NCBI GenBank assembly: GCA_001643675.2
Contig: LSRY02000014.1
Location: 124,001 to 188,000, forward strand
Direction: 5' to 3'
Length of the DNA stretch: 64,000 nt
Source of the DNA: Monocercomonoides exilis PA203
Taxonomy: Eukaryota > Protista > Preaxostyla
Shown: positions 21,512 through 42,900 of the stretch, piece by piece
Numbering within the stretch: the first letter of the stretch is position 1
Layout of the letters: each line of letters starts with the position of its first letter
Program-made: the position numbers and the translations under genes
The notes under the pieces: generated by a model
Database searches by the model: none
Seen by the model: only the letters and a program-made list of their open reading frames with translations
Told to the model about the DNA's origin: nothing

Positions 21512-24500
21512 TCAATAATTTGTATCCTCTTCATTGTCAAGAGGATCGTATAGCTTTCGTTTTTTTCTTTTCAAGATACAAACAATAATTATCACAACCA
21601 CACAAACACAGAATGCACCGGGAAGCACAATGACTAATATCAATTGTGTTGTTGATAATTCATTGAGCGATGTAGCCAAAACAACTTCATTCGAATACTT
21701 GCTTTGTAATTCTAGTCCACAAGAATACAAAATACGGCATAGGAACATAGTGTCTTTTTTGTTCTCCAGCATTGCGTGTGGAATCATTATTTTCATCTCT
21801 GTCTCATCCACAGATTCTGTTAATGGGTAATGATTCACCTGTAACTCTTTTCCATTTTTCACTTCTCTAATTTCAAGAAATAGATTGCAAGGAAATAGAT
21901 TTCTTCCTCGAATTACAGCAGAAATCTCTTCATCTGCTCCTTCATTGCTTTTTGCATTCCTTGCATTGCTTTTGCTTTTCTTAATGCATGTTATATTATT
22001 CAAAACAGGTGTGAAGAAGCACGAATCCATCTCTTCAGCTGCTTTCCCTTGGACTTTAAAATTCGAGAGCATGCCAAATGGTTTTCCGTCTAATCCATCG
22101 CTTCCAGGAGCCAAAGAGTGAATGAATTGCGAACTACGATTGGTGCTTTTGAATGATCGGATGTTGTGCCGAAAAGAAGGAAACTTCTCCCAATTCTTAA
22201 AAATTGGGTGGTTGTTTTCAAAAAAACAGTTATTCAGTTCAAAAGAAGACGATTTTGCTAAAATAGCACCATCTCCAATATTCACAAAAGAGCTGTTGTT
22301 AATATACGCATGTTCACACCCTTCAAGCAGTACCAGGCCAGAATCCCATATGCACAAATTATCATTCTCTTCGTAGCTTCTAAAGTAATCCTCAAATTTT
22401 GCGTCTTTTTTGCTAAAATCCAAAAAGTTCTTCTTATTTTCGACATTCCCGCAAGCCTTTTTATCAGAAATATTCTCGTTTCTCCCATAAACTACGAGTT
22501 GTGTGATATTTACTGCTTCTCCTTTGATTGAAATCAGTTTGTAAGGAAGTTGTTTTCCTTCTCCTCCAAGTACATTTTCTCCTTTTAAGCTAGTGTGCCA
22601 GGGCCTGAATATAACATCAACAATTACTAAATCATTACTCCCTCTTATTAAATCAAGTGCTTCTCCTTCAATAACATCTGGGTATTCAATGTCAATGTGC
22701 TCGAATGTTAGACATTCAAATATTTGTTCAAATACAGCACTTTCTTCCTCCACTTCAAAATTTGCTCCGATACGGAGAACTCCACGATCAAGCTCCATCA
22801 TTTGATATGAATGCTTTTGCGATGAAGATAAAGGTGAGGATCCTTTAAAGGCAGAAGTTAGAGTCACTTCTCGTTCAAAACTTATCGGCTTGTCCACAGA
22901 AACTCTATCAATGACCAGCATCATCACATGCGAAACATTTAAAAGATGTTTTTTGCCAGTGCTAATAAGTCCACATGGCTCGTCAATTCTTCCACACGTC
23001 TTCTCATTGCTGGCTTTATCGCTTCCAATGTAAATTTTCTTCGAAAAAAATGGCAATCTATTTGTTAAATCGCTCATAAGGTCAATAATATTTTCCGCTC
23101 CACTCTTCCTCTCTTCCACCAAAATCAGATTCTCTTCTCCATAATTCTCCTCCATCTCAAACGTAATTTCATTTTGTATCTGCTTTATTCCTATTGGCAA
23201 GGAAATATAACAGTATTTTCCTGCGTCGGCGTCGCAGTTCGAGAATAACAAGCCATCCAACTCGAGTTCAATACATTCAATCGCTTTTCCCATTGCTTCG
23301 ATGTAAATTGCTCCGCCTTTCGATTTTTCGTTTGATTTTATGTTACTATCTTTTGCATCTGCATATGAACTTATGCATGAACACTTGGTGAAGTTCATTT
23401 CGACAAACGTCATGGGATTTTGGCTATCTCCAATTTCTAAATATAAAGCCCCGCCCATTTTATGCTCAGCTGACCTACAATTCGAAATGTTGCCAAGGTA
23501 AAACGAGCACTTTTTGCATTCAGTCAAAACTGTAACAACAGATTGACTCTCACTTGATGTAACAATGTTGTCTAAAACAAAAAAATCAAAATCGACTTCT
23601 TCAGAAGCTTTTGCAAATATCAATGCGAGCGTTGATGAAAAGTCTTTAATTATAACTTTGGTAAAAAACAATGATCCCGATCTGCTTTCAATAAGAATAC
23701 AGTTTAGCATTTGCTTTGAATCTGCTGGTGCGATGCTAACGTTATAAATATTAATTGAAGAATCACTTTCATAGCCCACGAATAACCCATTGCGTCTTCC
23801 ACTTGATCTTGATGTATTCACTTGTACATTTGCTCCAGAAAGTTCAAAATATGCATTTTTCTTTACATTAAATAGTCCTTCACCTGGATGAACTTTCAAC
23901 TCATCCAACGCTGTGATAAGACTTATCATTTTGTTGGTACTGCCTGACAATTCAATATTTCGCTCTTCGATAAAAATGGGTTCAGTATCATGCTTATTGC
24001 AATCTTCTGAAGTGTATATATTATAATATCTTCCTGGGTAGCAATTTTCAACTGCCTTCTTTATCGTTTTGCACGGCGTCTTTTCCTCTCTGCCGCATTC
24101 TGCATCATCAACCCCCTTTGCGCCATCAACATTTACTCTTGATGTTTCAAAATAGAACCAGTCGTCGCGAATTTTTATCGAGCCATTTTTCAATATCACT
24201 CCAACTCGATTCTTTGAGGTGAAACTGTAAGAGGTATCATCAAAAGGCGAATGAGACATTTCAGCATCGCCATAATAAAGTAGTGCAACATCGTGTCCGC
24301 TATGATGTGCAAAGTTTCTCTTAAAAAAGCAATTTTGAAACAATCTTTTGTCGTATTTTATTTCTTTATCTCCAAAATTTATAAAAGCTCCGCCTCCATA
24401 ACGAGCTGTGCAATATATGAAACTTCCATTAACATCCTCAAACCCATTCATCAGCTGTAAGTCAAGTATTGTCAATCCTCCTCCATCTTCGGTGGCTTTG

Positions 24501-25570
24501 CATTCCTGAAATGTGACATTTTCCAATCTCACTTTTCCCTTCACTAACCCAATCATCATTCCTCCTCCTCGAATTGCAATTCCAAAACAAAACTTCGTGC
24601 CAATAATACTTAATTCGCTTTCTGCATGCAACATCTCAAAAAACAAAGACCCTCCCTTTTTTGATCCCTCTGATCTAACATTATCCATTTCGCATTTCAA
24701 AATTGTTATTTGAGCTTTTTTGCTTACTCCGTAAATCGCTTCCAGTATACTTGGCATCGCTGTTACTTGATTCACTTTAACAAATTTGCTTTCTTCTAAC
24801 GTGAATGAATCCGGAAGTTCCAAAGCGCATCCTTTTCTCAGCATTGTATTATTGATTTGGAGACCTTTCAACTTTTGCACATTAACTCCTTCGGAAATAT
24901 GAATCATCGCTGCCCCTGAACAGTAATAATTATCAAACAAGAGAAATTTTAGTCCGTCAACAACGACCTTTCCTTCTGTAATTATCATTATCGAAAAATG
25001 AAAGCATTCAAATGTACAATTTTCAAATTTTATGAAGCAGTCACTTATTGTCAAGTCTCCATCAATGCCATTGGATAAAATAATTGACGAAAGACTCTTC
25101 ACTTCATCTAACGCTTTCTCAGTTTTAGACAGCTGAAAAATGAAGGTTAAATGCTCCAACTTTAAGATTTTTTCGTTTGTCATGTGAAATTTTCCGTCTT
25201 CAGTAAGAGCTTTTAAATCAAAATATACTTTATTCTCTTCTATTTGACTTGATCCTGCTATTGTTAATTGGAAAACCTTTGAAAACATAAAGCCATAAGG
25301 TATCAAAATTGAGTCAATAATCTTTAAGATTTTATCTCCAGTTCCTTTTCCAAGCTGTTCAATCCCTTTTCCAATTGATCTGCATGGCTTTGCTTCTGCT
25401 CCGCAATTTGAATGCGAGTCATTGCCCTTTTCGGAAACAAAAGCAATATCACACCACTCTTCATTTAATCTATAAAATTTCTCTTTAAAATATATTTCTA
25501 TATTCCTCTGTTCAAAGGCGAAATTTCTTGATGAAAGTAATATTGTCAATGATATAATTCCAATAATCAT
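21512..25570 (-). CDS. Type I membrane surface protein with Pmp-like GG(A/G/S)xx / FxxN beta-helix repeats, 1352 aa, single exon
   Basis: Hydrophobic N-terminal signal, three CG....PC modules, KGGSLF/RGGGMM/DGGGLT/YGGGAF/KGGAIY motifs, C-terminal TM (LILVIVLPGAFCVCVVVIIIVCIL) followed by KRKKRK and a short tail. Confidence 0.85.
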   Translation of the reverse strand: MIIGIISLTILLSSRNFAFEQRNIEIYFKEKFYRLNEEWCDIAFVSEKGNDSHSNCGAEAKPCRSIGKGIEQLGKGTGDKILKIIDSILIPYGFMFSKVFQLTIAGSSQIEENKVYFDLKALTEDGKFHMTNEKILKLEHLTFIFQLSKTEKALDEVKSLSSIILSNGIDGDLTISDCFIKFENCTFECFHFSIMIITEGKVVVDGLKFLLFDNYYCSGAAMIHISEGVNVQKLKGLQINNTMLRKGCALELPDSFTLEESKFVKVNQVTAMPSILEAIYGVSKKAQITILKCEMDNVRSEGSKKGGSLFFEMLHAESELSIIGTKFCFGIAIRGGGMMIGLVKGKVRLENVTFQECKATEDGGGLTILDLQLMNGFEDVNGSFIYCTARYGGGAFINFGDKEIKYDKRLFQNCFFKRNFAHHSGHDVALLYYGDAEMSHSPFDDTSYSFTSKNRVGVILKNGSIKIRDDWFYFETSRVNVDGAKGVDDAECGREEKTPCKTIKKAVENCYPGRYYNIYTSEDCNKHDTEPIFIEERNIELSGSTNKMISLITALDELKVHPGEGLFNVKKNAYFELSGANVQVNTSRSSGRRNGLFVGYESDSSINIYNVSIAPADSKQMLNCILIESRSGSLFFTKVIIKDFSSTLALIFAKASEEVDFDFFVLDNIVTSSESQSVVTVLTECKKCSFYLGNISNCRSAEHKMGGALYLEIGDSQNPMTFVEMNFTKCSCISSYADAKDSNIKSNEKSKGGAIYIEAMGKAIECIELELDGLLFSNCDADAGKYCYISLPIGIKQIQNEITFEMEENYGEENLILVEERKSGAENIIDLMSDLTNRLPFFSKKIYIGSDKASNEKTCGRIDEPCGLISTGKKHLLNVSHVMMLVIDRVSVDKPISFEREVTLTSAFKGSSPLSSSQKHSYQMMELDRGVLRIGANFEVEEESAVFEQIFECLTFEHIDIEYPDVIEGEALDLIRGSNDLVIVDVIFRPWHTSLKGENVLGGEGKQLPYKLISIKGEAVNITQLVVYGRNENISDKKACGNVENKKNFLDFSKKDAKFEDYFRSYEENDNLCIWDSGLVLLEGCEHAYINNSSFVNIGDGAILAKSSSFELNNCFFENNHPIFKNWEKFPSFRHNIRSFKSTNRSSQFIHSLAPGSDGLDGKPFGMLSNFKVQGKAAEEMDSCFFTPVLNNITCIKKSKSNARNAKSNEGADEEISAVIRGRNLFPCNLFLEIREVKNGKELQVNHYPLTESVDETEMKIMIPHAMLENKKDTMFLCRILYSCGLELQSKYSNEVVLATSLNELSTTQLILVIVLPGAFCVCVVVIIIVCILKRKKRKLYDPLDNEEDTNY

Positions 25571-25879: not shown

Positions 25880-26476
25880 CAATTCCATCTTCAATCTTCA
25901 ACAATAAATAAAAAAAATACTTTATGCGATAATTGTTATTTGAAGAATATCTCTGTTTGTCTTTAGCATCCATTTCATGATAAAGAAATGAAAATGAGTG
26001 ATGTATTCGTGTTTGACAAAATATACAAAAATATCAAAAAGAATCGCACTGAGCAGGATTTGAACCTACGCGGGATGAACCCAGCAGATTTCTAGTCTGC
26101 CGCCTTAACCACTCGGCCATCAGTGCTCGTTATGGGAACAAAACCTTTTCCAATTTTCTCCTTTTTGTTGTTTTTCGAGAAAATCTCATTTTCATTCCAT
26201 ATTTTTTTTTTTGCAATAAGCTTTTAATTTAAATTTTCTGATTCAATATGCGATTTTCTTATGAGGCTTGTTGGTCTTATTAGTTAATGTTAACTTTATG
26301 AAGAGACAATTTTTTTTCTGATCTCAATTGACGCTTCCATTTTCCAAATGATTTGAACAGACATTCCAGTTAATGTCAAACATTCAGAATTGTGAAGGTT
26401 TTGGATGATCAAACACCATTAACATATAAGTTTACACACAAGAATGAAGAAGGAGAAAAAGTGGAAGAAACAATTT
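25880..26476. repeat. Left arm of 597-bp inverted duplication (reverse complement of 35215..35811)
   Basis: Line-by-line comparison found no mismatch; paired coordinates sum to 61691 at both ends. Confidence 0.95.
26045..26126 (-). tRNA. tRNA-Ser(AGA), copy in left arm
   Basis: Exact reverse complement of 35565..35646. Confidence 0.95.
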
Positions 26477-26534
26477 CTTTTTATGAAGAAACTTTTATTA
26501 CATATTCAATATATATTTTTCTGGATTTTGTTCT

Positions 26535-28967
26535 TTAATTCCTAATATTTTTCCCATTCAGCCCTTCTGATTTAACGCTTGTTGTGCAAATTTTTTCACA
26601 GAAAAATGTTCTATCACAGTCAAATGAGGCGAATGAGATGCACACGCCGTTGGCGGCAGTCTGTTGGTGTTGTGGAGCTGAGTTGATGCTGGTCATGGTG
26701 CAGTTGGCAAGGGAGAGGGAGAGGGCAGGGGAGGTGGCAGAGGAGAGGACACAGCTGGTGGGGGTGGCTGTGGAGGTGATGTGGGTGATGTTGGAGGAGT
26801 TGAGGGTGAGGGGTGCTGTGAGGGAGGTGAGGTGGAAGATGCTTTAACTGTTGAAGGTGAGACTGGTGATTGCTGTGTGGTTGAGGGCAAGGGAGCCAGC
26901 AGTGAGGAAGAAGAGTGGAGTTTTTATAGTTATGGAGGTTGTTCCGGTGATGGTGGTTGTGTTGAGGTTGAGGGAAGGGGAGTTATCGGAGAGGTGGAAG
27001 AGGATGGGGGTGATGGGATTTGAGGAGTTGTGGGCGATGGCGAGGGCAGAGACTGTGAGGGAGCCCTGGGTCTGTTGGAAGAGGGCAGAAGAGGCAGATG
27101 GATCTGGTGAAGAAAATGTTGATATTGATGAAAATGAAGAAAATGATGATGATGACTGTGATGACTGTGAATGTGAGTTTGGTGGCTGGGGAATGCCACT
27201 GGAGGCGATAGTGGTGGCAGTTGTGCCATTTCCAGTGATTTTTGTATTTGGAGCACGAAATGTGAGAGTCTTTGTGGGAGTGAAAGTGGAAATGAGAAGA
27301 GAGAGGGAAGCATCGCTGAAGGGAGCAACGCATCCGAGAGCATACTCCATAGTGGCACATGGGCTTTGCTGTGTTTTGCCACAGGTATCGATATCACTTC
27401 CATCATTTGAGACTATTTTGTTCTGATTGATGATTAGAAGCCAACTGTTGTACTCAACATTATCAGCAGTTCCCGCGTTCCACACTCTTTTTATTGGAGT
27501 TGTTGATCCACAATTTTCAAACGGAGATTGGGTGATGCTGCTGCCATTGAAAAACACATCATTTCCTCTGCCATTTTTAGCTATATTTCCATCGAAGAAA
27601 CAGAAAGTGATGAATTTTACTCCATTCATCCAGGAATAAGTATTCCTAAAAAACATTGCAGCTCCGCCACGTGTTGATGAAGTTGATGTCAATTTATTGT
27701 TTAAGAACCGGCAATCATCAATCAAAAACTGACTTAGTTTATTTTGTGGAGGGTAGTGAAATGTTGAAGAACCAGCTGAATCACCACCAGTATTTGAAAT
27801 GCATTTGCATTTGGTGAACAGGAATTGGCCGTTTGATGGAAAAGCACCAATATAAAAATACCAACCAGTTCCGCACCAATTTGTGATCGAACAACTTTCC
27901 ACCCTGTTTTCTGAGAATATCCAAACAGAATTTGATTGTGGATAAGCTATACAATTTGCTCCTCCATGAGCAGCCGTACAACTCGAGAAATTGGATTTTA
28001 TAATGTCAATTTTCAACAAGTAATCACAACGTGTCGCTCCACCATGGTCATTTGTTGAACAATTGTTGAATGAGCATGAAGAGATTGTGAGATTTGCATT
28101 TTCGCAAACAACTTTAAGAGCACCTCCATGATCACTACCACCCTTTGAATTATTCCATTCGCACCATTCAAATTTATGGCTGTTAACATCAAAGGAATCC
28201 AGTCTTCCAGGTTTAGCTCTTTGAGATTCTGTTCCAATATGAACCACAGGAGCATTTGGTGAAGAGCGTGTTTTGTGAAAGAAAGAGGCGTTGAAGGCAG
28301 AGAGAGAAGTGGATGGGCTGTTGATGTTGGGGAGAATGGCTCCATCGATGGGGTTGTGAGTGTGGAGGAAAAGTGTTGAGTGGATAGAGAGGGATGAGTG
28401 AAGAGAGAATGAGGGAATTGTATTGGTGTTGGTGTTGGTGGAAGAGGAAGAAGAGGAAGAGGAAGAAGTGGTTGAGATGAATGAATTGAGTGAGTGGGAG
28501 GGAAGGGATGGAAGAGATGGATGGGATTGGGGAGATGAGATGTTGGAGAAAAGGGCGTTTGAGAGATGGAGATTGAGGTGGATTTGGAGGTGGGGATGGG
28601 ATTGGTGATGGATATGGAGAGGGGAAGGGGAAGAGAGGGAAGAAGGAGAAAAAAGGAAGGGCTGGACGAGGGAGATGAAGGAGGAGAAAGAGGAGTGGGA
28701 GATGGAGAAGAAGGCAGGGATTGGAGAGTGGGGATCTGGGAGGAGATTGTTTGGGGTGGAGAAGAGGGGGAAGGAGAAAATGGCTGGTTGGGGGGTGGTA
28801 AGGGAGAAGTTTGTGAGGGAGAGGGAGGCATGGGCAGAGCGGAAAAGTGGAGATTTTGTTGCTGGGTTGACTTGGCAAATGGAGGAGCAGATGGTGGCAT
28901 CTGAGTGGTGTTGGGCAGTGAGGAGTGAACAACCGGCGAGAGGGATGATGTTCGATGTGTCACGCAC
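26535..28967 (-). pseudogene. Truncated Pmp-like surface protein gene
   Basis: HGGAL/HGGAT/HGGAN/RGGAA, FDGN and CGKTQQSPC motifs. An in-frame TAA at 26844-26846 is followed by more family-like sequence (SIFHLTSLTAPLTLNSSNIT). Another stop lies just upstream of 28967. No signal peptide or TM remains. Confidence 0.75.
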
Positions 28968-31077
28968 AAGAAAGTGTTGATGACATTAAGAGTTGTCAAA
29001 GCACAACTGACACAATCGCCTGGCGAAATTTTGCCTTATGAAAGATAACAACTACAATTGTTGTTGTATTTGCTGCTGCTGTTTTCAACTCTGATTGTGC
29101 TTTTTGATATCTTCCGATTTATTTCTTGTTGATTTCTTTTTTTCTGAAATGCCTCTGCCATTGATGCAATTGACAAGAGCCATTTCCAAAGCAATAGAAT
29201 TGAATACAGCTTTTGCGTTGATGTGGAGCCTCACTGCAGAGAAAACAGAGAAAAAACAGAAAATCAAAAGTCTCTGCTCTCGAAATTAAGTTATTTTCTA
29301 TTCGAATTAATTTTTTGTTAAATGTTTCTGAGAATGATTTTAATTTTTTCATGAATATATCATTTCTGAATCTGTATTATGAAAATAATTTATTGATTTG
29401 ATTTCTTATGTTTTTTTGCTATTGAAGAGAAGAATGAATGGTTTTGGAGTAATATGAATAAAAATGTGATCAAATGGAATAAAGAGAGTTTTGTAATGTT
29501 ACAAAATTATAAATTCAACTTGATTCTTTTTTCTGTTCAAGTGTATTTCGGGAAATTGTCCTGTTTAAATAACGTTTGCCTCTTATGTTGGAATAACATC
29601 TTCAATAATTATTGAGCCCAACGCAATTGATGGAATTTTTTAAGAAAGATTTTGCTCTTTTTTTTTTTTTTTTATTTTTATTTTTTTTTTTTTAAATATC
29701 GATCAAAAACAATTCAGAAACGTTAAAGTAACTTGCAACGCGATTCGCTCTGTTGATTTCTCGAATAGATGAAGATAACATGGAAATGTTGATATAGATG
29801 GAATATTAAAAATGAAAATAAATATTCACTTCTAATCAAAAAACAATGCTTATAACCATTGTCAGCATTGTTGAAAAACTTAAACGAAATTCCATCATCA
29901 ACAAAGTTGTCATATTGAATGAAACAACTGTAATAATAAACCCTTTCATCATGTTCAACAGCGTTGACTGAGAAAGATGAAGTTAAAAGAGTTGTCGAAG
30001 ATATGGATGCAGCCAAAACTTTCGAATCATTTCAGCTCAGATGGCGAGAAGTGAAAGAAAAAGAATATTTTCTGGGCTGTTCAACTATGGCTATTCTTTT
30101 CAAATTATGTCAAAGAGAATGGATCAAAACGTTTACTGCTTTCTTCATAAACTTTAATACCCAACAGTCTCTTCATGTGTGTTTGTTCAGACAGTTCTTC
30201 CTTCACACTTCCAGATGCAAAAAATCAAGGAAGTGTTTCTTTCTCTCCATTTCAAAACAATTATTCACTTGTCTTTTTCCTTTGTCCTTTGAATACTTTT
30301 CTTTTCAAAGACAATGGATTTCACTGTTGGACGACTTCAACAAGTCTATTATAATTAACGAACCATCTCAAGTGTGTGGCTTTGCTCTTTGAAAAAAAAG
30401 CTGAACTTCACAAATCGTTTTTGTTCACAACAAAAAAGAAATCACCATATCTTGATGAAAGAAAATGAATATGTTATTGTCTCAATCAAAAACTATCATT
30501 TACCATTCATCTCATAAAAGGGTCCACTTCCTTTCCATTTATTTACAAATTTTTTTTCCAATCTCAATCTATGTTGATTGTCTGTTTTTCATTCTTTCCT
30601 TTCAATAATCTTTTCAACCTCCTTGAGCTGAAGTGAAAAAAATAAAAAAGAGTTTAAGAATCATATATCATTGAACTTTGTTGTATGTGCCTTTCAGAAA
30701 CAAGCAATTTTTAACTTTTTCAACAATGTTGTTTTCTTATTTTCCTATTCTCTTCAAACATATTCACTTCTTTAATCAGAGAGTGCACTCTTCAAAGAAA
30801 AACAAATTCTTCATTGATGAATTTTTAATACCCTCTTTATAAATTATATGATTTGATCCGAAATGGAAAAGTGTGTTTCTTTTTTGGTCTTTTCCAACTG
30901 AGTCTTGATTTCATTGTGCTCTCTTTTTCATTATTTTTCACAAACAAAATCATTTGGAATTGAAATTGATCCTTTTTCTCTCTTCAAGACAATCTTCAAT
31001 GTTTTGTGTTCTTTTAATTATTTTTTGACTGACAAACTGTTTTTGAAAAATATGAATCTCGTTGGATGATATCCAGA

Positions 31078-32478
31078 ATGAAAGAGTGTGAAGGCAATCA
31101 ATCTGAAGGCAGAACTGTGGAGAATATTACAAATGAAAGGTTTTCAAGTTTGCAATGTAATCTCTTTTGATCAAATTTGCAATTCCTATTGTTCTTTTGA
31201 TGTTTTTTGAAGAGCACCTCCATGAGTTGGAGCATTGTTCAGAAATGGAGCAGAAGCAGAAAATTGAAGAGATGAATGGAATGATGGACAAAATGGACGA
31301 AAACGAATTGCGTTGTGTTTTGACGAATGAGGTATTCAATGAAATCGACAAAATGATTGAAGAAAAGAAATTATCTTTAGATAATACGATTTTGTTATTG
31401 AAGAAAATGGGATATCTCAATGCGTTGAAATCAATATACAGCTCGTTCTTTGAAAAATCTTCACTTGTCGAAAGATTTGAAAGGTTGGTAATCGAAGAAG
31501 AAAAGAAGAATGAAGAAAAGAAGAATGAAGAAAAGAACGAAAAGCTTCTGATCGATCTTTGCGAATGCTATCTTTTTCTTATTGAGTTCTTTTCATCTGA
31601 ATCAATTTCAATCAGTGTGTCATGTCTTCTGGTGGTTGCTTTGAAGAAAGAGGAAAACGAGGAAACTCAAAAAGAAGTGGAAATGGCTCTACTGGCTTTA
31701 AGTCGTATTGAAATCTGGAAAGTTTAAATAAATTCAATATTTTTTTTTTTTGAAAGAATTACTAATTTTAATTTTTTCTTTTAAGGTCGTGAAAAAAGCG
31801 AATTTTATGAATGAGATAGGAGATTTAATAAAATATCATCAAGAACATTGCAACCTCACTCAGCTTGCATATCAATCAGTTTGGCAATTGCTGTTGCACC
31901 GATTGAGAGATGAAGGAAGTCTGAAAAAGGTGCTTGCGAATGAGCTGAATTTTGTGAGAGAAGCAACAAGAGATTTAGAGGATCTAAAAAGTTGTGTGAA
32001 TTGGAGAGGAAATAACAATGAAATCGAAGCAATGAAAAAATCATCTATTATAAAGAGATGGATGGCTTTAATACAAATATTTTGTTTCCACTTTGATGCT
32101 TCAAAAGCAGATGGATTGGAAGATTTAGTTGTATGCATTGTTGATCTGTGCCGAATATCAATTGAAAATTACAAAAGCTTGCACATCCACTGCAGTAGCA
32201 AGTTTTTCTCCTTGATTTGCCAAAAAGAATTGAGTGTGGACATTTTGATGGAGAAAGGAGTTGTTGATTACGTGTTAGAGGAAACTCTTCAGCCGACGAT
32301 AAATTTTGATTTAATTGAAAATTGTGTTCCTTTCCTTTCGTTGCTTCAAAGAAGGATAAACGAGGAATATGCCGAGAAGCATGACGAGCACAAACGAGAG
32401 TTGCTTCAAAGAAAGCTATCTGATAAATTAGAAGAAGAAGGTTTTTCCGATATTATGGCAATATACATTTATTACTAA
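31078..32478 (+). CDS. Lineage-specific helical protein family, copy 4, 3 exons, apparently intact
   Basis: ATG 31078 ...NERFS|KHLHELEHC; ORFs 31167 and 31750 joined in frame by a GT-AG intron; same motifs; local 15-nt tandem expansion (EEKKN-EEKKN-EEKN). Confidence 0.85.
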
Positions 32479-33049
32479 GCTTTCAACTTTTCCAATTTTT
32501 TTTGAACATTCATGACACGATAAAACAGAGCTCAATTATCTTATAGAAAAATGATAATATTCTTATGGTGTTGAAGTTGTTTGATGTTATTCAGCGACTT
32601 TTTTCTCTTCTAAAATTAACAGATAATTCTTTTTCATTTAATGAAAAATGATTTTTGCTTGTTATTGGAAGGAAACATTCAAGACGGTGAATGTTCCAAA
32701 GATTATTTCTAAATAAGTGATAAAACAATAAACCGTTGATGAAAACAATTATCCATCATTAAAAAAGTATGTTATATTTCCATTTTTCCAAAAGTTGGGA
32801 CAAAGTGGTGTGTTTCTGAATTTTTTTTCAAGCTTCACTTTCCAAAATATTTCTCAATTTTTTAATTTTCCTTAATTTTTTGCTTGAGAATTCAAGACTT
32901 ATTATGATATGATAACAGAAAAAGTTTGGAGCAAATTGTTATTTTTTTCATAAATGAAAATATTTCGTCCCAAATTAAAACGTCCTCTTCAAAAAAGCAT
33001 ATTACCCGCAACAAAACTCTGCTCTTTCTCGTTTCTTTTTGGAAGAAGC

Positions 33050-35330
33050 CTAATATTGATAAGGACGATGTGGATTTATAGAATCCCTGTTTTCCAAAAT
33101 TTCTTGCCCAAAAATAGAAAGCTTATGCGTTTCTTGAAGCGGAAGAGGAAGCGAAACAGCTCCAAAGAAATTGCAGTAATTGTAGCACAGACTGTTCGTA
33201 ATGCAAATCAGTTCCTCTGGTGCAAGGCCTGTCGCATCAACAACTACCACATAGCGTGTTGGCAGCGCTGTGGTGCGATAATCCACTTTCTGAGGGATTA
33301 GAAACCAGTCGCAGCAGAAGTCTGATGTAACCACATTATCAATCACTGTACCTGGTGAGGGATTCTGACCGCCAGTAGTGAAAAAGTGATGGTGGGTTCT
33401 CTTGTCTACCACAGCCACAGCATGGTGCGGACGATATTTAACCTCTCCTTCGTCAAATTCACAAAATGCACGCAGCATCTGTTCATATTCTATTCCCACC
33501 ACATCTCTCAACCATACATCACCAATACCATCTCGATACTCAATAATGTATGAAGGAAGATTTTTATTAATTGCTTTGTACTCTTCAAGCGCACTCTTCA
33601 AAAACATGAACCACAGATTTCCTCCAACAATCTCTTTCTTCTGCTTGCAAGAGGCTGTTCTCTTGTAAGTCCTAGTCATTTCCCTACTCATAGAAGCAAT
33701 CATTGCAATCGTTTCTTCACAGCGGACTTTTGAGCGAGACACATCAATAGACAGCACCATCACATTCCCATCGCCTGGGAGAATGCGCATCGAATTCATT
33801 GGCTGAGCAAGTGCTAACTTCTGCTTTCCTCTTTTTATCCATTTTGGAGCTGGTTGATGCTTGGCATTTGATGAAGCTGAAGCTGAAGCCGATGCAGATG
33901 CAGATGCAGATGCAGAAGCTGGTGAATAATAAAAAGAAGAAGAAGAAAAAGACAGAGAAGATGATGATGAAGAAGAAGAATAGAAGATAATAACAATAAT
34001 CATAATAATAATGGAGTAGCTGATGAAGAATAGCACGAATGTTCAGTTGGCACATCTGCTGTTGCGTTCAATGATTTTTCCCAATCTGGAAGCTCAATCG
34101 CCCAACAAGTGCCTCCAATCTTGTGTGTGATCTGCATCCAAAGGCCAGCAAAAAGTGATGCATAATGAGACGTCAAGTTCTTTGACAAGATGCACTGAGA
34201 TGGAATGGAGTTTTCGAGTCTCTGTCATTATCTTCATTTGTTTGTAGCGATTTGTGTCTTTATTTGGCAAAATGACAAGGGCAAGTTGATAGCTGCTAAC
34301 ATCTCTGGTGAATATTCTCTTGAAGTCAGTGTGAAACGGGGTTTGATAATTATCTTTGATTTCCAGAATATCTGGCTGAGCAATACGTACCCGATTTACC
34401 GCATATCTGAGTTGACTGAGAAAGTTGTCAATGTTTCTTGCATCTCGTTAAGAGCAGTCACAATCCATTTTTCGAGGTTGACGGGACTCGGCAAATTGTT
34501 CCTTCTTGCCATCTCGTATCACACTCCTAACAGTCATAGAAAAGCATATTCGAGGTGTTGCGCGAGAAATAGAAGAATGAAAGAAAGAAAATAATTATTG
34601 CATAAAAAATGAATCATTAAATTCAAATAAAATCTACCAAAAAAAGAAAAAGAAAGAAAAAATAATTTTAATTTGTTCTCATTATTAATGCAATAATATT
34701 TCATACCATTAGAAATTGGAAATGTTCTTCCACCACCCCATCTGAGATAGACGAGTGGGCATATCCATCCCTGAATTCTCTCCATCTCTTTTAATTTCGC
34801 TTCTATTCCTGCATCTTTTAACTCTTTTGACTCCAAAAATGGCTGCGCAATGCTGTCTATTAATCTCATTCGATCACGTGGAGAGTGTGTGTGCATTTCC
34901 TTGACTTTCTTCATCAAACGAAAATCGCTCAAATACTCTTCAAATCAAATTTTAATGCACATTTATGCAAAAAGTGCACAATAGAAGTTACATGTTACAT
35001 ATGAAAATGAATAAAATCAAATAAATAGGAAAAAAGTAATTACAATCAAAAGGGAAAGAATCAATGTTCGTAAAAGCAAACATTTCTGTAGAGATTGCAA
35101 GCTCCATCAGAATATCTGCAAAGTTTGATGAGCCCGTTCCACTGGTTGATCGGCAGAGTAAAAGTTGCTGACTTAGATGTAGATAGATTTTGTGGTGCGT
35201 GATAAAATAATCATAAATTGTTTCTTCCACTTTTTCTCCTTCTTCATTCTTGTGTGTAAACTTATATGTTAATGGTGTTTGATCATCCAAAACCTTCACA
35301 ATTCTGAATGTTTGACATTAACTGGAATGT
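33050..35330 (-). pseudogene. Piwi-clade Argonaute, 5'-truncated and disrupted in PAZ/L2/MID; PIWI domain open
   Basis: PAZ (TFRIVKVLDDQTPL..TIYDYF..LMELAIST), L2 (SDFRLMKKVKEMHTHSPRDR), MID (LALVILPNKDTNRYKQMK; IPSQCILSKNL; QITHKIGGTCW), PIWI (SIDV, KEIV, YRDGIG, VDKR, PGTVID, PTRY, LCYNYCN, THKL). Lesions: TGA at 34519-34521, frameshifts near 34450, 34212 and 33980, TGA at 34000. Confidence 0.9.
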
Positions 35331-35564
35331 CTGTTCAAATCATTTGGAAAATGGAAGCGTCAATTGAGATCAGAAAAAAAATTGTCTCTTCATAAAGTTA
35401 ACATTAACTAATAAGACCAACAAGCCTCATAAGAAAATCGCATATTGAATCAGAAAATTTAAATTAAAAGCTTATTGCAAAAAAAAAAATATGGAATGAA
35501 AATGAGATTTTCTCGAAAAACAACAAAAAGGAGAAAATTGGAAAAGGTTTTGTTCCCATAACGA

Positions 35565-35646
35565 GCACTGATGGCCGAGTGGTTAAGGCGGCAGACTAGA
35601 AATCTGCTGGGTTCATCCCGCGTAGGTTCAAATCCTGCTCAGTGCG
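35565..35646 (+). tRNA. tRNA-Ser(AGA)
   Basis: Acceptor stem GCACTGA/TCAGTGC, A-box TGGCCGAGTGG, anticodon arm GCAGA-CTAGAAA-TCTGC (anticodon AGA), long variable arm GGG-TTCAT-CCC, T-loop GGTTCAAATCC, discriminator G73, no intron, no encoded CCA. Confidence 0.97.
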
Positions 35647-35650
35647 ATTC

Positions 35651-35655
35651 TTTTT
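35651..35655 (+). terminator. Pol III oligo-T terminator after tRNA-Ser
   Basis: T5 run four nt downstream of the discriminator base; also present in the left arm. Confidence 0.7.
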
Positions 35656-36983
35656 GATATTTTTGTATATTTTGTCAAACACGAATACATCACTCATTTT
35701 CATTTCTTTATCATGAAATGGATGCTAAAGACAAACAGAGATATTCTTCAAATAACAATTATCGCATAAAGTATTTTTTTTATTTATTGTTGAAGATTGA
35801 AGATGGAATTGATGAGGTAATAAGCATTCTTGTTTGAATATTAATTTTTATTGAAAAAATTTCGTATAGATATTTTGTTTAGATGCAAAACATTCGCTGC
35901 AATTAATAATAAATTATAAAATTCTCTTGATATGTTATCTTTCTTTTCAATAACCTCAAAAGATTAAATTCACTTACAGCTTTAATAAAAGAATGCAGTT
36001 ATTTTTTATCTATATCGTTTTAAGCAAACATTTCCAATAATTTCACAAATATCAACAGTTATAGATAATGAACCAATTAGAGGAGTGGTGAGTTTTCTTA
36101 TTGAGATAATTTCAAACAATTCTCAAACTAACAATTTAATAGATTATATTACTTTCTTTTCACTTTGAAAAGATAAAAATATGAACGAATCACTTTCATG
36201 AATTTTTATATAATGGGTATAATCAAAAAAGGATGAAAAATTTAAAACAAAAATTTTTATGCACTTGATGTGTTGAATGCATTATAATACGTTTGGCAGA
36301 AAACTGAAAATTACTGAAAATTTTGAGTGCTGTATTTCAAATGTAGTTTTTTTTTCTTGGATATATAAATTGAACGCAAAATGAAGTTAGTCTAATGTTT
36401 CATTGATGATGGTTCTGAGAAAGATTTTTTATTATCAATAAATAATTTAGTTTTTAATTTGTGTTAAAAGAGTAGATTGCTTGAAAGATTTTTGAGTGCA
36501 ATTATTATTCAAACATTGTTGTATTGGTGTTTGCTTTTAATTTTACATATTGAACAAACACAAACAGAAAGTCCATAAATACATTGAATTGATAAAACAG
36601 AAAAATTTTATGTGAAAATTCAAAAGCACTCAAGTATTTAAAAAAACAAAATATTAATGATCAGTGAAAATGAAAGATTCTCAACTAAACTGAAAGGTTG
36701 TTTGTTCAAGTGGAAAGGAACATTTTCACATCAAATCATCGAGCAAAACAATTGCGTTGTGAAGATGAGTTATAAAATGTTCAAAAAGTGCGTATTAAAA
36801 TAAAAAATAAATATTTTTTTTTAATTTTTTTATGTAACATTTTGGCAAAGAATAAAAAGAATTTTGTTTTATAAATAAAACGAAAAAAATAATAACAAAA
36901 TATGAAAGTATTTGTAAAGGCAATCATTAGCTCCAATATTTGCAAATAAACAGCATTTTCCCCGTCTATTGAATATATTTCAC

Positions 36984-39900
36984 TTATGGCTCGTATGCAT
37001 CCCAAAAGCTGTTCATTCCCTCAAACACATCGCTAAACGCAGCACTGCTCCTCTCGTTGTCCTTCTTTGGTGTTCTCTTTCTGTGCTTCTGGTGCTGATG
37101 CTGGTGGGAGTGCTGCCGAGAAGACCTCCTCTGATGCTTCTCAGAATCTGCTGCTTTGTGCACAGGGAGAGGCATCTGAGACGATCGATGGGCAGAAGAA
37201 GAAGAAGATGATGATGATGAATGAGCAGAAGGAGATTTCACTGCATTCACAGAATGTGCTGCTGAAACAGAAGACGATGCAGACGCTGGTTTTGGCTGTC
37301 TCGCAACTGTCTTTGCTGAAGAAAGAGAGAGATTGCGTTGGATGTGCTTCATCTCTGCCCATCGCTGCCACCCTCTCCTCCTCATTGCCTCTCTGCTCTG
37401 CTTCTGCTGGATGCTCTGCCCATACAGCACTGCCTCAATGTCTGGATTCGCCGAAAAGAACGGCACATCGTTCTTCCCTGGCTGCGGTGGAGGAGGCGTC
37501 TTCTCAAAATGTACTGCAAATTCTGCCTGCTTTGCCGGGTCAGACACCTTCAGCCACTCATTAATGGTCTGCTTCCACTCTTCCTCTGCCACACCTGCCC
37601 TGTCTCTGTTCAGCAGCTCTGTCCCTCTCAGCCACTGCTTCTTTGCTGACGCACAATGATACCAGAGGCACTTGTCGTAGTCCTTCATGCGCTGATTGTA
37701 CTCTTCGTCCCACATCCGCTCCTCAAACGCCTGCAGCAGCATAATCGGCCGGCGGTGCATGTCAGCTGAAGGGCGGGTGAATGAGGTGGAGACAGGAACA
37801 AGCATCCCCAACGATGACACAGTTACAAACATTTCAGAGTCAGCAGAAGGAGAAGGAGAGACAGCATGAGCAACATCAGCTGGGAAAAGAGAGGTGGATG
37901 TTGTGATGGCAGTGACAGCAGATGAAGATGAGGAGGAGGAGGAAGATGAAGAGACAGGTGATGAAGGAGATGGAGTGGGAGAAGTCGAAGGCGAGTGAGA
38001 TGAGACAGAAGCAGATAAGGACATGTTTGAAGTGACAGACACGTTTGTTGGCTGAGTGAGGATGTTGTGATTATCTTTGGAAGCATCAGAAGAAGCAGCT
38101 TGTGAGAGAGGAAGAGAAAGAAGAGGAGGAACAGACAGATCGTTGGATGAAGAAGAGGGAAAGACAGAGGTTAAAGATGGTGCTGTTGTTGGAGGTGACA
38201 TGGAAAGAGGAGGGTTGAAAGCATTTGCAGACAAAGAAGAAGAAGGAAAAGAAGATGATGATGAATCAGTTGCCAATTGTGAATGATTCACAGCACTTGC
38301 ACCATCAACCTCAGTCGATGCAACAGCCGATGGCGAAATCGTTGTGCTGAATTCAGCTGCTTCTGAATGCAACTCTTGTGCATTCGGTGAAATGTGCTGA
38401 GCGACCGAAGGAGAAGACGATGAAGCAGCATGTATTCTGACAGCAGCTGCTTTTGAGGAGGAAGAAGCCATTGGGAAGAGAGGGTGGGAAACAGCAGATC
38501 CAGATGAAGTGTGATATGGCTGTGTAGGTGGCATCAGAGCACCATTTGGAGTGTCAGGCGAATCAACAGAGTTCTGAAGGAGATCGGTTGAGACGACGAA
38601 TGTGGTGGTGGTGGAGGAAGAGGAGAGGGAAGAGGAGGAGGCAAAGGCAGCAGAGGACGGATAGGCAAATGTGGAGGAATATGCCATGGATGAGATTGGG
38701 GTGGAAGGGTTAGACAGAACAGTGGCAGATGTCGAGTATTTCTGGATGTGTGGGCTGTGTCCAAAAGAATACTGGAGCACTTCCTCCTCTTCTTCGTGTT
38801 CAGCTCTCTCGTCTTTCTTTTCGCTGGTCAAGCTTTCACTCACGACTTCATTTCCATCTTCACCCGAATCGCTAATTAGCATCTCATCGATCGATCCTGA
38901 CTTTGTAGTTGTCGTCACTGTGGTTGTCGCTTTCCCACTTTCTTGTTCGTGTTTCTCTTCTTCTCCTTCTTCTTCGTCTTCCTCCTCCACCTCTTCTTCT
39001 TCTCCTCCTGCTCTTCCTCTCATTTCCCTTGCTTCCATGAAGCACTCTCGCTCCTTCTGCTCCTTCAGCTCTTCTTCCTCCTGGCAAAGTCTGAACATCT
39101 TGTAGAACAAACCAAGCGTCCTTTTCACAGAAGCCACTGCTGCCAACCGCATTGTTGCTCCTTCGATGTCTGTGTTGCTCTCATTCGTCGTGATGTGCAG
39201 ATGAACCCAGCGTGCCCTCAAGCAGTTGCGCAGCGACAGCGCTTTCCTCTCCCCCTCTCTGTTCTTCCACTTCCTCGCCTGGAACACCCTCACTGCCTTC
39301 TGCAAAATGAGTGTGGCCTTCTTCAGCTGGACCATCTGCTTCGCCACTTTTCGCCTTCGGAAGTGCGACTGCATCGACAGCACTGCGCCAAACAATGCAC
39401 GCGAATAGAGACGGGCGCACGTGGAGAACGAAGAAAGAGCAAAGCGGACGAGTTCTGGGCGCTGCCTCGCAATGAACTCGTCTTGCACTTTGTGCACAAA
39501 CTCCACAATTTCCATCTTCGCCTTCCTCTCTTTGATCCGATGCCAGCGGAAGTACCAGCGCTGGATGGAGCGTGCAGCAGACGAGCGGCGGAGGTTGGCA
39601 AGTGTCTGCAGAACATGGCTCAGTTCATTTGCAGAGCCGTAGTAGAAGACGAGAATGGATGGGACAAGGATGTCACGCACAGACACCACAATTGGCGAAG
39701 AGATGGACGAATTCGACTCTGACGAGGCTGTGTTTTGTGAATGCCTGGCAGAAATGGAAGAAGAAGTGGATGGCTGCGATGCAGACGCCAATGACGATGA
39801 AGATGCCATGTGTGCTGCAGATGAAGCTAATTGGGCTGACAGATAGCTGTGGTCAGTGCGGAGGATGGATGACAGGATCGGGTGGCGGTGCAGCGGGATG

Positions 39901-42900
39901 AGCAGCTGCTGGGGCGTGTTCACAGACACTGTGTTGAGTATCTGCCGTCTGAGATTCGAGGAAATGTCTTCCGTCACCAAGAAGTACTCAGCTGTTGTCA
40001 GATAAATCCTCACAAAGGCGAGTGCCCTCACTTGCTCTGAGGACAAGCGAAGTGTTCTGTAGATGAGTGACACTTGCACTGGATCATTCAAGTTTGCCTT
40101 CAGTGACTGTGCTGACGGAGACTGGCGGAGCATGTCAGGAGCGCAAGAGGAGTCAGACGAGGCTGTGCTGGTTGTGGCGAATGAAGCAGACGAGTGTGAC
40201 TGATGCAGACTCGAAGTGCTCGAAGATGCTGGGAGAGGCTCAGCTGGCGATGCACAGGGCGAAAACGGAGGATGGATCAGTGCATCAAAAGCAGCCTCGT
40301 CGATGGGCTTCTTCGTGTACTTGTGCGTGGGGTGGTAGTTTGGATGCTTCTGTGTGATGATTTCGTCCAAGTGCTCTTTCCTCGTCCGCACGCTGCTGTC
40401 GAACAGCACTTTGAAGGCCATCATGAACAGCATGTACTTTCTGCGCATCTGTGACATCTTCATAGTCATCCCCAGCGAAGATAGGATGCTTGGCGAGTGG
40501 ATACCAAAGGAGCCATGTGTGCAGATGACAAGCAAGGCATATGTGATGTTCATCAGCACTGCACCAATGATGCTCTGCTGCTCAGGTGAACACATCGAGG
40601 CAATGAAGCGCTCTTTGTGCTGCACATAATGCTGTAAGGTGTCCTGAGCACGTGGATAAGCAGGGGGAGAAGGAATATGATGAGGCAGCTGATGCATCGA
40701 GTGTTGCTGTGTGATAGCAACTGGCCAGTTGTGTCTGGGAGGTGCTGGAAGAGAATACCTCTTTTTCTGTCTGCTTCGCTTAGGAAGCAATTCAGATGGA
40801 TTTTGTGAATTCAAAGAGGAGAATGATGGAAGGGGAGAAGCATCTGCCTCTTTTGAAGGTAAAATAGTTGAAGACAAGTAAATGGACGAAGACGAAGAAG
40901 GTGCGATTGTACTGGGTAAAGCAGAATCAGCTGTACCACTTTTGTGCTTCGCACCTTCAGCTGCTGGCAGATGTGTAGTTGGAGCATATGCCAAAGGAGA
41001 GGATGCTTCAGTCAGCACAGTCGTCGACAGAAACGGGTGTGGGTAATTGTCTGGTGATGAAAGCGTGTCAAATTGTGAGAATGAGTTATGTTGCGATATC
41101 ACCTGGCGCGTGTTCTTTGGAGAGCTGCTGGAAGATGAAGAGTTCTTCAAATGCCGCGCCGAACGCGATGGGCGGCATGCGATTTGCTGTTGAGAAGACT
41201 TCAGTGGTGTCTGTCTGAACGACTGCTGATTGAGATTCTGTGTGCTTGAGGAAGAGCGGAAGATAGAGTGAATGTGAGGAAGGAATGTGGACTTGGAGCG
41301 AGACAGCATTCGTGGATTGTCGGCATCAAGAATGTCTGTACGACTCGAAAGATAAGACGGATGAAGAGAAGAAGTGGAAGGATAGCGAAGGAGCGAGAGA
41401 GTGGAGAGTGAGGAGGTGTTGCCTGGAGAGAGGGGCATTCCAGTGAATGAGGACAGCTGCTGAGAGTCGATTGGAGAGAGGCTTTTTGAATGCTGTTGGA
41501 GTTGAGACTGAATCTGTGGAGTGGAATGTTGTTTGGGTGATGAATTATTTGGAGAAGAAGAAGATTGCTGCTGAGGTTGTTGTTGCTGTTGTGGAAGCTG
41601 AGGAATCTGCAGAGGAGAAGAGGCAGCACTGTTGCTGTTTGAATTCAGCGGTGTGCCAGTTAATGTCTTTTGCTGCTGTTTTGTTTGAGGAGTTGCCACA
41701 TGATCAGTTCCTGCAGCATTTGCATTCGCCTCAGGAGTTCTTTGAAGATTGCCATGCGATTGCACATGATGTTGTTGATGCTGCTTTATGTTCTGCTTCT
41801 GCATATGATCTTGCTGCTTTTCAATGCTTTTATCAGATCCGCCAGCAGACTTCAGAGACAATTCCTGTTTCATCCTCTCGTTCCGCTCCACTCGCCCAAC
41901 AAGCTCTTCCTCCAGCGAATAGTCACACAGCAGAAAGTGCGTGGAGGCAGCAGCCGATGCAAAGAACGAACCAAACTGCAGAGCAAAAGAAAGCGCTCCA
42001 CGGGCATATCGCCGCATTGCAGGAGACGGTGAGTCGAAGATGGATCTGCTCATAAAGCGCTTCATGTCTTCGTCTGTCAGCACAGTTGCTGGTTGCTCGT
42101 CTCCAATTGCATTGTCTGACAAGCTGTAGTTGGAAAGATGGGATCCGTCTGAGCCAGTCGAGGCAGAATAAGAGAGAGAAGACGAGGAGCTTTGATGAGT
42201 GCGCCGAAGAGAGGCCGACTTCAGGCGGTGCGGTGGCAGCGGCACAGGCTGGAAGTTCTGAGGTTCCAGTTCGAGTTGCGAGGAGTCGAGCTTCATGTAC
42301 AGCGGAGGAGGCTCTTCAGCATCGCCGGCGCTGGCAAACGGGATTGAATAGGCAGAAGTGGAGAGCGAGGTGTGGAAAGAAGAGGAAACTAGGCTTTCTC
42401 CGCTGCGCATCAGAATGTTTGTGGAGAGGGACGGGCGGAAGGGATGCTGATTGGCTGTGCTGCTCAGCTGTTCTGACAGAGACATCTGCAGTTTCTGCTC
42501 ATGAGAGTACTTTCCTGTTCCCTCAGATCCATCTTGTTGCAGCCACAGTTTGTTTGCGTTGTCGTCGCTGTAGTCAGCACCGTCGATGGTTTCAGCAGCA
42601 GACGCCGAGGTGGATGTGGTTGAGGCGGTGGTGATTGTTGGCTGGCTGTCTCGCTCGCTCGGCTGACGGTCCAGCTGCTCAAAACTCTCCAGAATAATCT
42701 TTTCGGTGGTGTTTTCTTCTTCTTCAGTGCCTTGATCGCCATTCTCATTCACATTCTCATTCACATTCACATTCACATTCACATTCACATTCACATTCAC
42801 ATTTCCTGTCTGCTGCTTGCTGAGTGGCATTTCGATGTCTGCTTCTTGTGTCTCGCAGCTTTCTGTGCTTAGCTCTTCGTCCAGCAGAATAACCGCATTG

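What the first reader, a model, noticed from the sequence alone, without database searches (positions are those of the whole stretch)
25880..35811. Perfect 597-bp inverted duplication of a tRNA-Ser + Piwi PAZ-exon cassette bracketing an 8.7-kb island
Seen: the two arms are reverse complements with no mismatch found. Each holds tRNA-Ser(AGA) with its terminator plus 116 nt of the Piwi PAZ exon. The right arm is continuous with the rest of the Piwi gene; the left arm cuts the exon mid-frame and sits at the broken 3' end of a surface-protein gene. Between the arms lie a truncated Pmp-like gene, decayed ORFs, a family gene and the Piwi remnant. Inference: the right arm is the donor and the left a very recent templated copy. 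Identical inverted arms would allow the island to invert by homologous recombination, or could mark a tRNA-bounded mobile or insulated module.
Basis: partly seen in the sequence, partly recalled or inferred. Interest (0 to 1): 0.8.

Follow-up and report, generated by a model that had tools for sequence, protein, structure and literature searches.

The report
Young inverted duplication around a pseudogene block
A 597-base stretch holding a serine tRNA gene and the start of a broken Piwi gene is present twice, perfectly identical and in opposite orientation, around 8.7 kb of dead gene copies in a protist genome; it looks like a recent scar of DNA breakage and repair, not a mobile or regulated module.

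Summary
Window 25880-26476 and 35215-35811 are exact reverse complements (597/597), with sharp edges and no similarity beyond them. Each arm carries a tRNA-Ser(AGA) gene and the last ~50 nt of an intron plus the first 116-124 nt of a Piwi PAZ exon. The arm occurs only at these two places in the 82.3-Mb genome, which by its assembly statistics is Monocercomonoides exilis.

New here: the "island" between the arms (26624-35380) is an older, decayed segmental copy (69-87% identity, colinear) of a locus on contig 47. That locus holds an intact Piwi gene, two small family ORFs and a full-length receptor-like surface gene. The two ends of this old copy explain both truncations, the Piwi 5' end and the surface-gene 3' end. 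The parent locus has no tRNA and no inverted repeat.

The arms are therefore a later, one-off event. My first choice is a small inversion with a staggered break, whose known by-product is exactly this kind of duplication. A template-switch copy of the right arm is nearly as likely. Without reads or an outgroup I cannot separate the two.

A mobile, insulated or switch-like module is not supported. Other tRNA genes in this genome also sit in inverted duplications, which is a lead worth following.

The parts
25880..26476 (.). Left arm of the perfect inverted repeat
   Evidence: 597/597 identical to the reverse complement of 35215-35811; only two full copies in the genome
35215..35811 (.). Right arm of the perfect inverted repeat; its inner edge is continuous with the Piwi remnant
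26045..26126 (-). tRNA-Ser(AGA), left copy; 3' end points outward, 165 nt from the outer arm edge
   Evidence: ARAGORN, Rfam RF00005 60.1 bits
35565..35646 (+). tRNA-Ser(AGA), right copy
26311..26476 (+). Orphan copy of the end of a Piwi intron plus the first 116-124 nt of the PAZ exon, cut mid-exon at 26476
   Evidence: 87% identical to C47:1990011-1990177; tblastn to the paralogue's PAZ exon
32974..35380 (-). Piwi remnant. PAZ exon 35338-35075, next exon 34962-34606, PIWI-domain exon 34500-33053 with a decayed middle. The ArgoN/L1 exons are absent and homology stops inside an intron at 35380
   Evidence: blastn and tblastn against the intact paralogue in L011; Pfam Piwi 1.5e-36 and weak PAZ
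26477..26595 (.). About 120 nt of unique sequence between the left arm and the end of the old segmental copy
   Evidence: no other match in the genome
26596..29277 (-). 5' part (about 870 codons) of a giant receptor-like surface-protein gene. It is cut at its 3' side near 26596-26624 and has an in-frame TAA at 26844-26846 where paralogues read Gln
   Evidence: family of more than 1700 candidates, full-length frames of 2500-3100 aa; end of homology; paralogues read on; C47 parent has a TM segment and a kinase-like tail
26624..35380 (.). Older segmental duplicate, colinear and in the same orientation as G000:C47:1980617-1990177 (69-87% identity)
   Evidence: blastn, genome search
31167..32478 (+). 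Two adjoining ORFs (186 and 242 aa) of a dispersed family, also present in the C47 parent locus and at 4078-4750 and 8362-9159 of the window
   Evidence: no Pfam family
26711..26731 (+). Canonical G-quadruplex motif, 235 nt from the left arm's inner edge; one of only two in the 64-kb window
   Evidence: regex scan
21512..25570 (-). Left flanking gene (1352 aa, C-terminal hydrophobic segment). Its ATG lies 309 nt from the arm
   Evidence: weak paralogues elsewhere
36984..44546 (-). Right flanking gene (2520 aa, no Pfam family, not of the surface family). Its stop lies 1.17 kb from the arm
   Evidence: 35812-37000 is unique in the genome

Best explanation
The repeat is a real, very recent, one-off by-product of DNA breakage and repair at an already rearranged, gene-dead locus. 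Shown: an older ~8.8-kb copy of a contig-47 locus (5' third of a receptor-like gene, two small family ORFs, 3' two-thirds of a Piwi gene) lies next to a tRNA-Ser gene and has decayed. Inferred: later this block was inverted. One breakpoint was staggered by 597 nt across the tRNA-Ser gene and the Piwi end of the block. The other was a plain break about 120 nt beyond the surface-gene end. Filling in the overhangs and end-joining left the staggered stretch at both ends of the inverted segment, in opposite orientation. On this model the junctions Lf|arm (25879/25880) and island|right arm (35214/35215) are ancestral, and 26476/26477 and 35811/35812 are new. The result is an extra, probably working, tRNA-Ser gene and an orphan 116-nt Piwi exon piece. 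No function of the arrangement is implied. The identical arms could now support further flips by homologous recombination.
For: Perfect identity with sharp edges and no diverged homology outside the arms points to a young duplication, not an old repeat with a converted core. The arm is single-copy apart from this pair. The right inner junction is ancestral, since Piwi continues there. The island is a diverged colinear copy of C47:1980617-1990177, so the arm, which contains 166 nt of that copy, must be younger than it. The size and layout match inversion-coupled duplications in Drosophila: 17 of 29 inversions have them, the median is 321 bp, the range is 46 bp to 1.9 kb, and in 12 inversions against six only one breakpoint region is duplicated (PMC1885836). 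Inverted duplications that have diverged (90% and 97%) exist around other tRNA genes of this genome, so inverted duplication is a genuine process here and not only an assembly effect. Both breakpoints lie beside sequence types known from the literature as replication-fork barriers: a tRNA gene, and a G4 motif that is one of two in 64 kb (PMC8998199 abstract).
Against: No outgroup, second assembly or reads could be consulted, so the ancestral order is unknown. The same structure arises from a copy-and-paste template switch. No second duplication marks the other breakpoint. Both repeat edges lie within 166 nt of the two ends of the older segmental copy; a random later inversion does not predict this, and I cannot explain it. 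Perfect identity may be slightly flattered by short-read polishing of repeats, because the assembly had ten rounds of Pilon.
Confidence: 0.4

Rival explanations
1. Templated inverted insertion. A stalled fork or broken end at the left site (25879|26477) switched to the opposite strand about 9 kb away. It copied 597 nt from the right arm (tRNA-Ser plus the Piwi exon start) and returned. The island was never inverted.
For: The right arm's inner junction is ancestral and the left arm cuts the exon mid-frame. A tRNA gene in the donor and a G4 motif 235 nt from the acceptor site are both fork-barrier types. Template switching that makes inverted copies is well documented (papers listed, e.g. PMC10766186, PMC4215184; only their listed abstracts were read here).
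Against: Nothing distinguishes it from the inversion model with the data at hand. No microhomology or filler can be recognised without the ancestral sequence.
Confidence: 0.3
2. Assembly or polishing artefact. Only one copy of the 597-nt stretch exists, or the two copies are similar but not identical and were made identical by short-read polishing.
For: The genome is an ONT/Canu assembly with read N50 8.9 kb, polished by Nanopolish and ten rounds of Pilon. Its authors say that multi-copy parts are polished unevenly (PMC8767320). No reads could be checked here.
Against: The known ONT fold-back artefact gives spacer-less palindromes, often at contig ends. It does not give 597-nt arms around 8.7 kb of unique, colinear sequence in the middle of a large contig (the window starts at position 124001 of contig 8). 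Coverage was high: 12.9 Gb of reads for about 82-110 Mb. Diverged inverted duplications elsewhere show the process is biological. Polishing cannot create the sharp-edged second copy.
Confidence: 0.12
3. An old inverted repeat, perhaps made together with the segmental copy in one multi-switch repair event, kept identical by gene conversion between the arms.
For: Both repeat edges sit within 166 nt of the ends of the old segmental copy, which hints at a common origin. In this genome the tRNA-Gln arms on contig 23 are 99.8% identical, while the paralogous contig-7 locus has 90% arms and 85-94% flanks. Arms can therefore be far more alike than their age suggests.
Against: Conversion tracts rarely reach the exact ends of homology, so old arms should have frayed, diverged edges. 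Here identity is perfect up to abrupt edges. The island itself is 13-31% diverged from its parent.
Confidence: 0.12
4. A functional arrangement of one of three kinds. It could be a recombination-driven invertible segment, a tRNA-insulated or mobile module, or a hairpin locus. In the hairpin case, read-through from the truncated surface gene would give antisense Piwi RNA and small RNAs.
For: 597 nt of perfect inverted homology is ample for recombination. Transcription of the truncated surface-gene fragment (minus strand) would run into the left arm antisense to the PAZ exon piece; this is read from the sequence. Inverted tRNA pairs recur in the genome.
Against: The arm is unique to this locus. 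There is no target-site duplication. No Pfam recombinase or transposase was found in the island ORFs that were scanned. The content is pseudogenes, so a flip changes no product. The parent locus lacks any such frame. An 8.7-kb loop is a poor hairpin.
Confidence: 0.05

Closest known systems
Inversion-coupled inverted duplications (staggered-break model; Ranz et al. 2007, PLoS Biol 5:e152, PMC1885836)
   Same: Non-repetitive, otherwise single-copy sequence is present once at each end of a segment in opposite orientation. The size is within the reported 46 bp-1.9 kb range. Only one breakpoint is duplicated, as in most of their cases. A gene fragment is left behind.
   Different: The inversion itself is not demonstrated here because there is no outgroup. 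The segment is only 8.7 kb. The arms are still 100% identical, against about 88% on average in Drosophila. The duplicated piece carries a tRNA gene.
Replication-based template switching (FoSTeS/MMBIR) that makes nearby inverted copies
   Same: A short inverted copy placed a few kb from its source, with abrupt junctions, next to fork-barrier-type sequences (a tRNA gene and a G4 motif).
   Different: Junction microhomology cannot be assessed. No triplication or larger copy-number change is present.
Fold-back palindromes of this same genome (e.g. tRNA-Arg palindrome at C37:~338 kb; earlier scan notes on MITE-centred palindromes)
   Same: Same genome, inverted orientation, a tRNA gene close to a rearrangement boundary.
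   Different: Those have arms that meet at a spacer of about 12 nt. Here 8.7 kb of non-palindromic sequence separates short arms, so hairpin-primed fold-back does not fit.
Terminal inverted repeats of composite or foldback transposons
   Same: Two inverted identical ends around a block of genes.
   Different: No target-site duplication, no transposase, no further copies. The inside is colinear with an ordinary chromosomal locus.

Membership tests
Inversion-coupled inverted duplication (staggered breaks) | Two copies in opposite orientation at the two ends of one segment | tested here: met
Inversion-coupled inverted duplication (staggered breaks) | Duplicated sequence is not a dispersed repeat | tested here: met
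   Only two full-length copies in 82.3 Mb. The other hits are the tRNA alone or Piwi paralogues
Inversion-coupled inverted duplication (staggered breaks) | Segment is inverted relative to the ancestral order (outgroup comparison) | not testable with these tools
   Flanks are unique in the genome.
Inversion-coupled inverted duplication (staggered breaks) | Duplication size in the known range (46 bp-1.9 kb) | tested here: met
   597 nt against PMC1885836
TIR, composite or foldback transposon | Target-site duplication directly outside the inverted ends | tested here: not met
   No direct repeat between 25879-leftward and 35812-rightward above shuffles
TIR, composite or foldback transposon | Several copies with the same ends in the genome | tested here: not met
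TIR, composite or foldback transposon | Transposase or other mobility gene inside | tested here: not met
   Pfam finds only Piwi/PAZ in the island ORFs scanned. The island is colinear with the C47 chromosomal locus
Site-specific invertible switch | Recombinase gene nearby and an alternative product or promoter orientation | tested here: not met
   No recombinase domain in the ORFs scanned. The contents are pseudogenes. Not every small ORF was scanned
Fold-back (hairpin-primed) palindrome | Arms meet at a short spacer | tested here: not met
   8738 nt of non-palindromic spacer
tRNA (Rfam RF00005) | Cloverleaf scoring above the gathering threshold, with a Pol III T-run terminator downstream | tested here: met
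   60.1 bits against 29 for both copies. ARAGORN calls Ser(AGA). A T5 run lies 7 nt after the 3' end. Expression was not tested
Argonaute/Piwi gene | Complete N-PAZ-MID-PIWI open reading frame | tested here: not met
   N-terminal exons are absent from the window, the MID part is decayed and frames are broken. The parent L011 copy has ArgoN (weak), PAZ and Piwi

The most novel reading that the evidence does not exclude
tRNA genes, as Pol III-bound replication barriers, are recurrent breakpoints that seed inverted duplications and small inversions in Monocercomonoides exilis, and this locus is the youngest, still perfect example. Among 63 scored tRNA hits, 12 sit in six same-type inverted pairs within 20 kb, against one direct pair. 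In the three pairs I could read, as here, a rearrangement boundary lies 31-325 nt downstream of the tRNA 3' end. If this is true, the identical arms would also make the 8.7-kb block flip at a measurable rate in the culture.
Probability: 0.2. Interest if true: 0.55.

Novelty: new member of a known kind. Interest (0 to 1): 0.27.

Why it matters
By itself this is a small structural scar in a pseudogene-rich stretch. It adds one tRNA-Ser gene and an orphan Piwi exon fragment, and no new biology is needed to explain it. Its value is as a clean, dated snapshot. The arms are still identical and their edges are sharp, so with the public long reads or a sister strain one could read the mechanism (inversion or template switch) directly from the junctions. 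Together with the other inverted tRNA pairs and the many palindromes noted in this genome, it could help show whether Pol III genes are preferred fragile sites in an oxymonad.

Tried and rejected
(1) I looked for older, diverged homology beyond the arms, which would indicate a gene-conversion core. There is none above shuffles.

(2) I looked for a second breakpoint duplication (island left end against the reverse complement of the right flank) and for target-site duplications. There are none.

(3) I tried to recover the ancestral order from paralogous flanks. The left flank matches only distant paralogues of the 1352-aa gene's coding part, and the right flank is unique.

(4) I tested whether the missing 3' part of the surface gene lies beyond either arm, which would tie its truncation to the repeat. 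It does not. The truncation is the end of the older C47-derived copy.

(5) I tried to reach an independent assembly or read-derived contigs with the look-up of encoding contigs.

(6) I tried to fetch the remaining inverted tRNA pairs (C24, C56, C63) and the direct pair on C45.

(7) I used 5S rRNA as a control family for inverted pairing. It is uninformative because 5S is in two large arrays.

(8) The bacterial promoter/terminator scan is irrelevant for a eukaryote.

(9) The comparisons of the flanking genes with the surface family found them unrelated.

Full report
ORGANISM AND ASSEMBLY

The window is G000:C8:124001-188000 of an 82,301,135-base genome in 101 contigs. These figures match the Oxford Nanopore assembly of Monocercomonoides exilis PA203. 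That assembly is 82.3 Mbp in 101 contigs, built with Canu 1.8 from reads with N50 8.9 kb and polished with Nanopolish and ten rounds of Pilon (PMC8767320). Earlier scan notes name the same organism. I did not confirm the identity by sequence. The genes here have spliceosomal introns of roughly 80-150 nt.

THE OBSERVATION

The repeat finder reports arms at 25842-26484 and 35207-35849 at 97%. Base-by-base comparison shows that all 19 mismatches lie in the outer 38 and inner 8 positions. The core 25880-26476 / 35215-35811 is 597/597 identical.

Local alignments of 60-600 nt (arm-adjacent flanks) and 100-1000 nt (other flank combinations), in every sensible pairing, do not exceed shuffled controls. 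The edges are therefore abrupt. There is no frayed older homology, no second duplicated stretch and no target-site duplication.

Each arm holds a tRNA-Ser(AGA) gene, at 26045-26126(-) and 35565-35646(+). Both are called by ARAGORN and by Rfam at 60.1 bits against a cut-off of 29. A T5 run follows each gene.

In the whole genome the arm has only these two full copies. Other hits cover just the tRNA (other tRNA-Ser genes) or just the last 166 nt (Piwi paralogues on contig 47).

WHAT LIES BETWEEN THE ARMS

All four are parts of one thing.

Window 26624-35380 is colinear, in the same orientation, with G000:C47:1980617-1990177 in five blocks of 69-87% identity. The contig-47 locus contains:
- a full-length receptor-like surface gene, as two frames of 960 and 1696 aa with a hydrophobic segment and a kinase-like tail (PF07714, 34 bits);
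- the same two small family ORFs;
- an intact Piwi gene with exons for ArgoN (weak), PAZ and Piwi.

The window copy is cut at both ends.

On the Piwi side, homology stops inside the intron before the PAZ exon at 35380. The N-terminal exons are nowhere in the window.

On the surface-gene side, homology to the family stops at about 26596-26624, while every paralogue reads on in frame. The copy has also decayed. It has an in-frame TAA at 26844 where paralogues have Gln, and broken frames and a low-complexity insertion in the Piwi MID part.

The contig-47 parent has no tRNA gene and no inverted or direct repeat in 30 kb. The 'island' is therefore an old segmental duplicate that landed beside a tRNA-Ser gene, not a module defined by tRNAs.

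ORDER OF EVENTS

The arm contains 166 nt of the old duplicate's Piwi end plus 431 nt of the local tRNA-Ser flank. The arm's Piwi piece is 100% identical to its partner but only 87% identical to contig 47. The arm duplication is therefore later than the segmental copy, and young. The right arm's inner junction is ancestral, since Piwi continues there. The left arm's inner junction (26476/26477) is new.

MECHANISM

Two known routes give exactly this picture.

(a) Inversion of the block with a break staggered by 597 nt at the tRNA/Piwi end and a plain break at the other end, followed by fill-in and end-joining. In Drosophila, 17 of 29 fixed inversions carry such inverted duplications. The median size is 321 bp and the maximum about 1.9 kb, and in 12 inversions against six only one breakpoint region is duplicated (PMC1885836).

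(b) A replication or repair template switch that copied the right arm into the left site.

The two routes differ only in which outer junction is ancestral. I could not test that. I put (a) at 0.40 and (b) at 0.30.

Both breakpoints lie beside fork-barrier-type sequence, which is an inference from the literature. One is the tRNA gene itself. The other is a canonical G-quadruplex motif at 26711-26731, one of only two in 64 kb.

An assembly artefact is unlikely (0.12). The structure is internal to a large contig and has a long unique spacer. Diverged inverted duplications exist elsewhere in this genome. Even so, perfect identity could be slightly flattered by polishing.

An old repeat kept identical by conversion is disfavoured by the sharp edges. 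It is kept at 0.12 because of an unexplained coincidence: both repeat edges lie within 166 nt of the two ends of the older segmental copy.

FUNCTION

I find no support for a mobile, insulated or switch-like module:
- the ends are unique to this locus;
- there is no target-site duplication;
- no mobility or recombinase domain appears in the ORFs scanned;
- only pseudogenes lie inside the segment.

The arms could recombine and flip the block, but nothing coding would change. Read-through from the truncated surface-gene fragment would be antisense to the orphan PAZ piece. A small-RNA role is conceivable but has no evidence.

CONTEXT FOUND ON THE WAY

A tRNA family search of the genome scored 63 hits. 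Twelve of them form six same-score pairs on opposite strands within 0.7-20 kb, against one direct pair. This orientation bias is not significant on its own: 6 against 1, and two of the pairs share ancestry.

The three pairs I could read are all true inverted duplications:
- tRNA-Gln on contig 7: arms of 296 bp at 90%, tRNA genes 4.6 kb apart;
- tRNA-Gln on contig 23: arms of at least 1.7 kb at 99.8%;
- tRNA-Arg on contig 37: a palindrome with a 12-nt spacer at 97%.

In each of these, as here, a boundary lies 31-325 nt downstream of the tRNA 3' end. The 5S rRNA genes form a plus-strand array followed by a minus-strand array on contig 15. Earlier scan notes list many other inverted duplications in this genome. 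This suggests a genome-wide tendency, possibly tied to Pol III genes, but I could not test enrichment properly.

VERDICT

This is a new instance of a known kind of rearrangement scar, of modest interest in itself. It is useful as a clean test case if reads or a sister genome are consulted.

Noticed in passing
G000 (own genome): C7:130290/134875, C23:301591/321436, C37:337618/338344, C24:771220/773622, C56:141309/150254, C63:15538/25264: Six close pairs of identical-scoring tRNA genes on opposite strands among 63 scored tRNA hits, against one direct pair (C45:89520/97693). The three pairs read (tRNA-Gln twice, tRNA-Arg) are real inverted duplications of 90-99.8% identity. The C7 and C23 loci share outer flanks, so they descend from one ancestral pair.
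   Followed up: partly
G000:C15:1360580-1391038 (+) and 1409441-1435538 (-): 5S rRNA genes lie in a tandem array of about 1.3-kb units on the plus strand. About 18 kb further on is a second array of about 1.4-kb units on the minus strand, so the two arrays form a large inverted arrangement.
   Followed up: no
window 26596-29277 and genome-wide (e.g. C25, C17, C47): The 'Pmp-like' fragment belongs to a very large family: more than 1700 first-look candidates, many with open frames of 2500-3100 aa at 71-82% amino-acid identity. The contig-47 member has a transmembrane-like segment and a partial protein-kinase domain. Pfam finds no Pmp repeat.
   Followed up: partly
window 26711-26731 (+): A canonical G-quadruplex motif, one of only two in the 64-kb window, lies 235 nt from the left arm's inner edge.
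   Followed up: partly
window 26477-26624 and 35215-35380: Both edges of the young inverted repeat fall within 166 nt of the two ends of the older contig-47-derived segmental copy. A later independent event does not predict this coincidence, and I could not explain it.
   Followed up: partly
L060 (C21:1277897-1280970) and L061 (C26:6611-9684); L055 (C74) and L056 (C77): Stretches carrying tRNA-Lys and tRNA-Cys are 98.5% (1757 nt) and 99.3% (3 kb) identical between different contigs. One lies 8 kb from a contig start, and two are on small contigs. They may be redundant contig ends or recent duplications.
   Followed up: no
window 4078-4750, 8362-9159, 31512-31741: Copies of the small 'family gene' recur in the window at 71-77% identity, in both orientations.
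   Followed up: no
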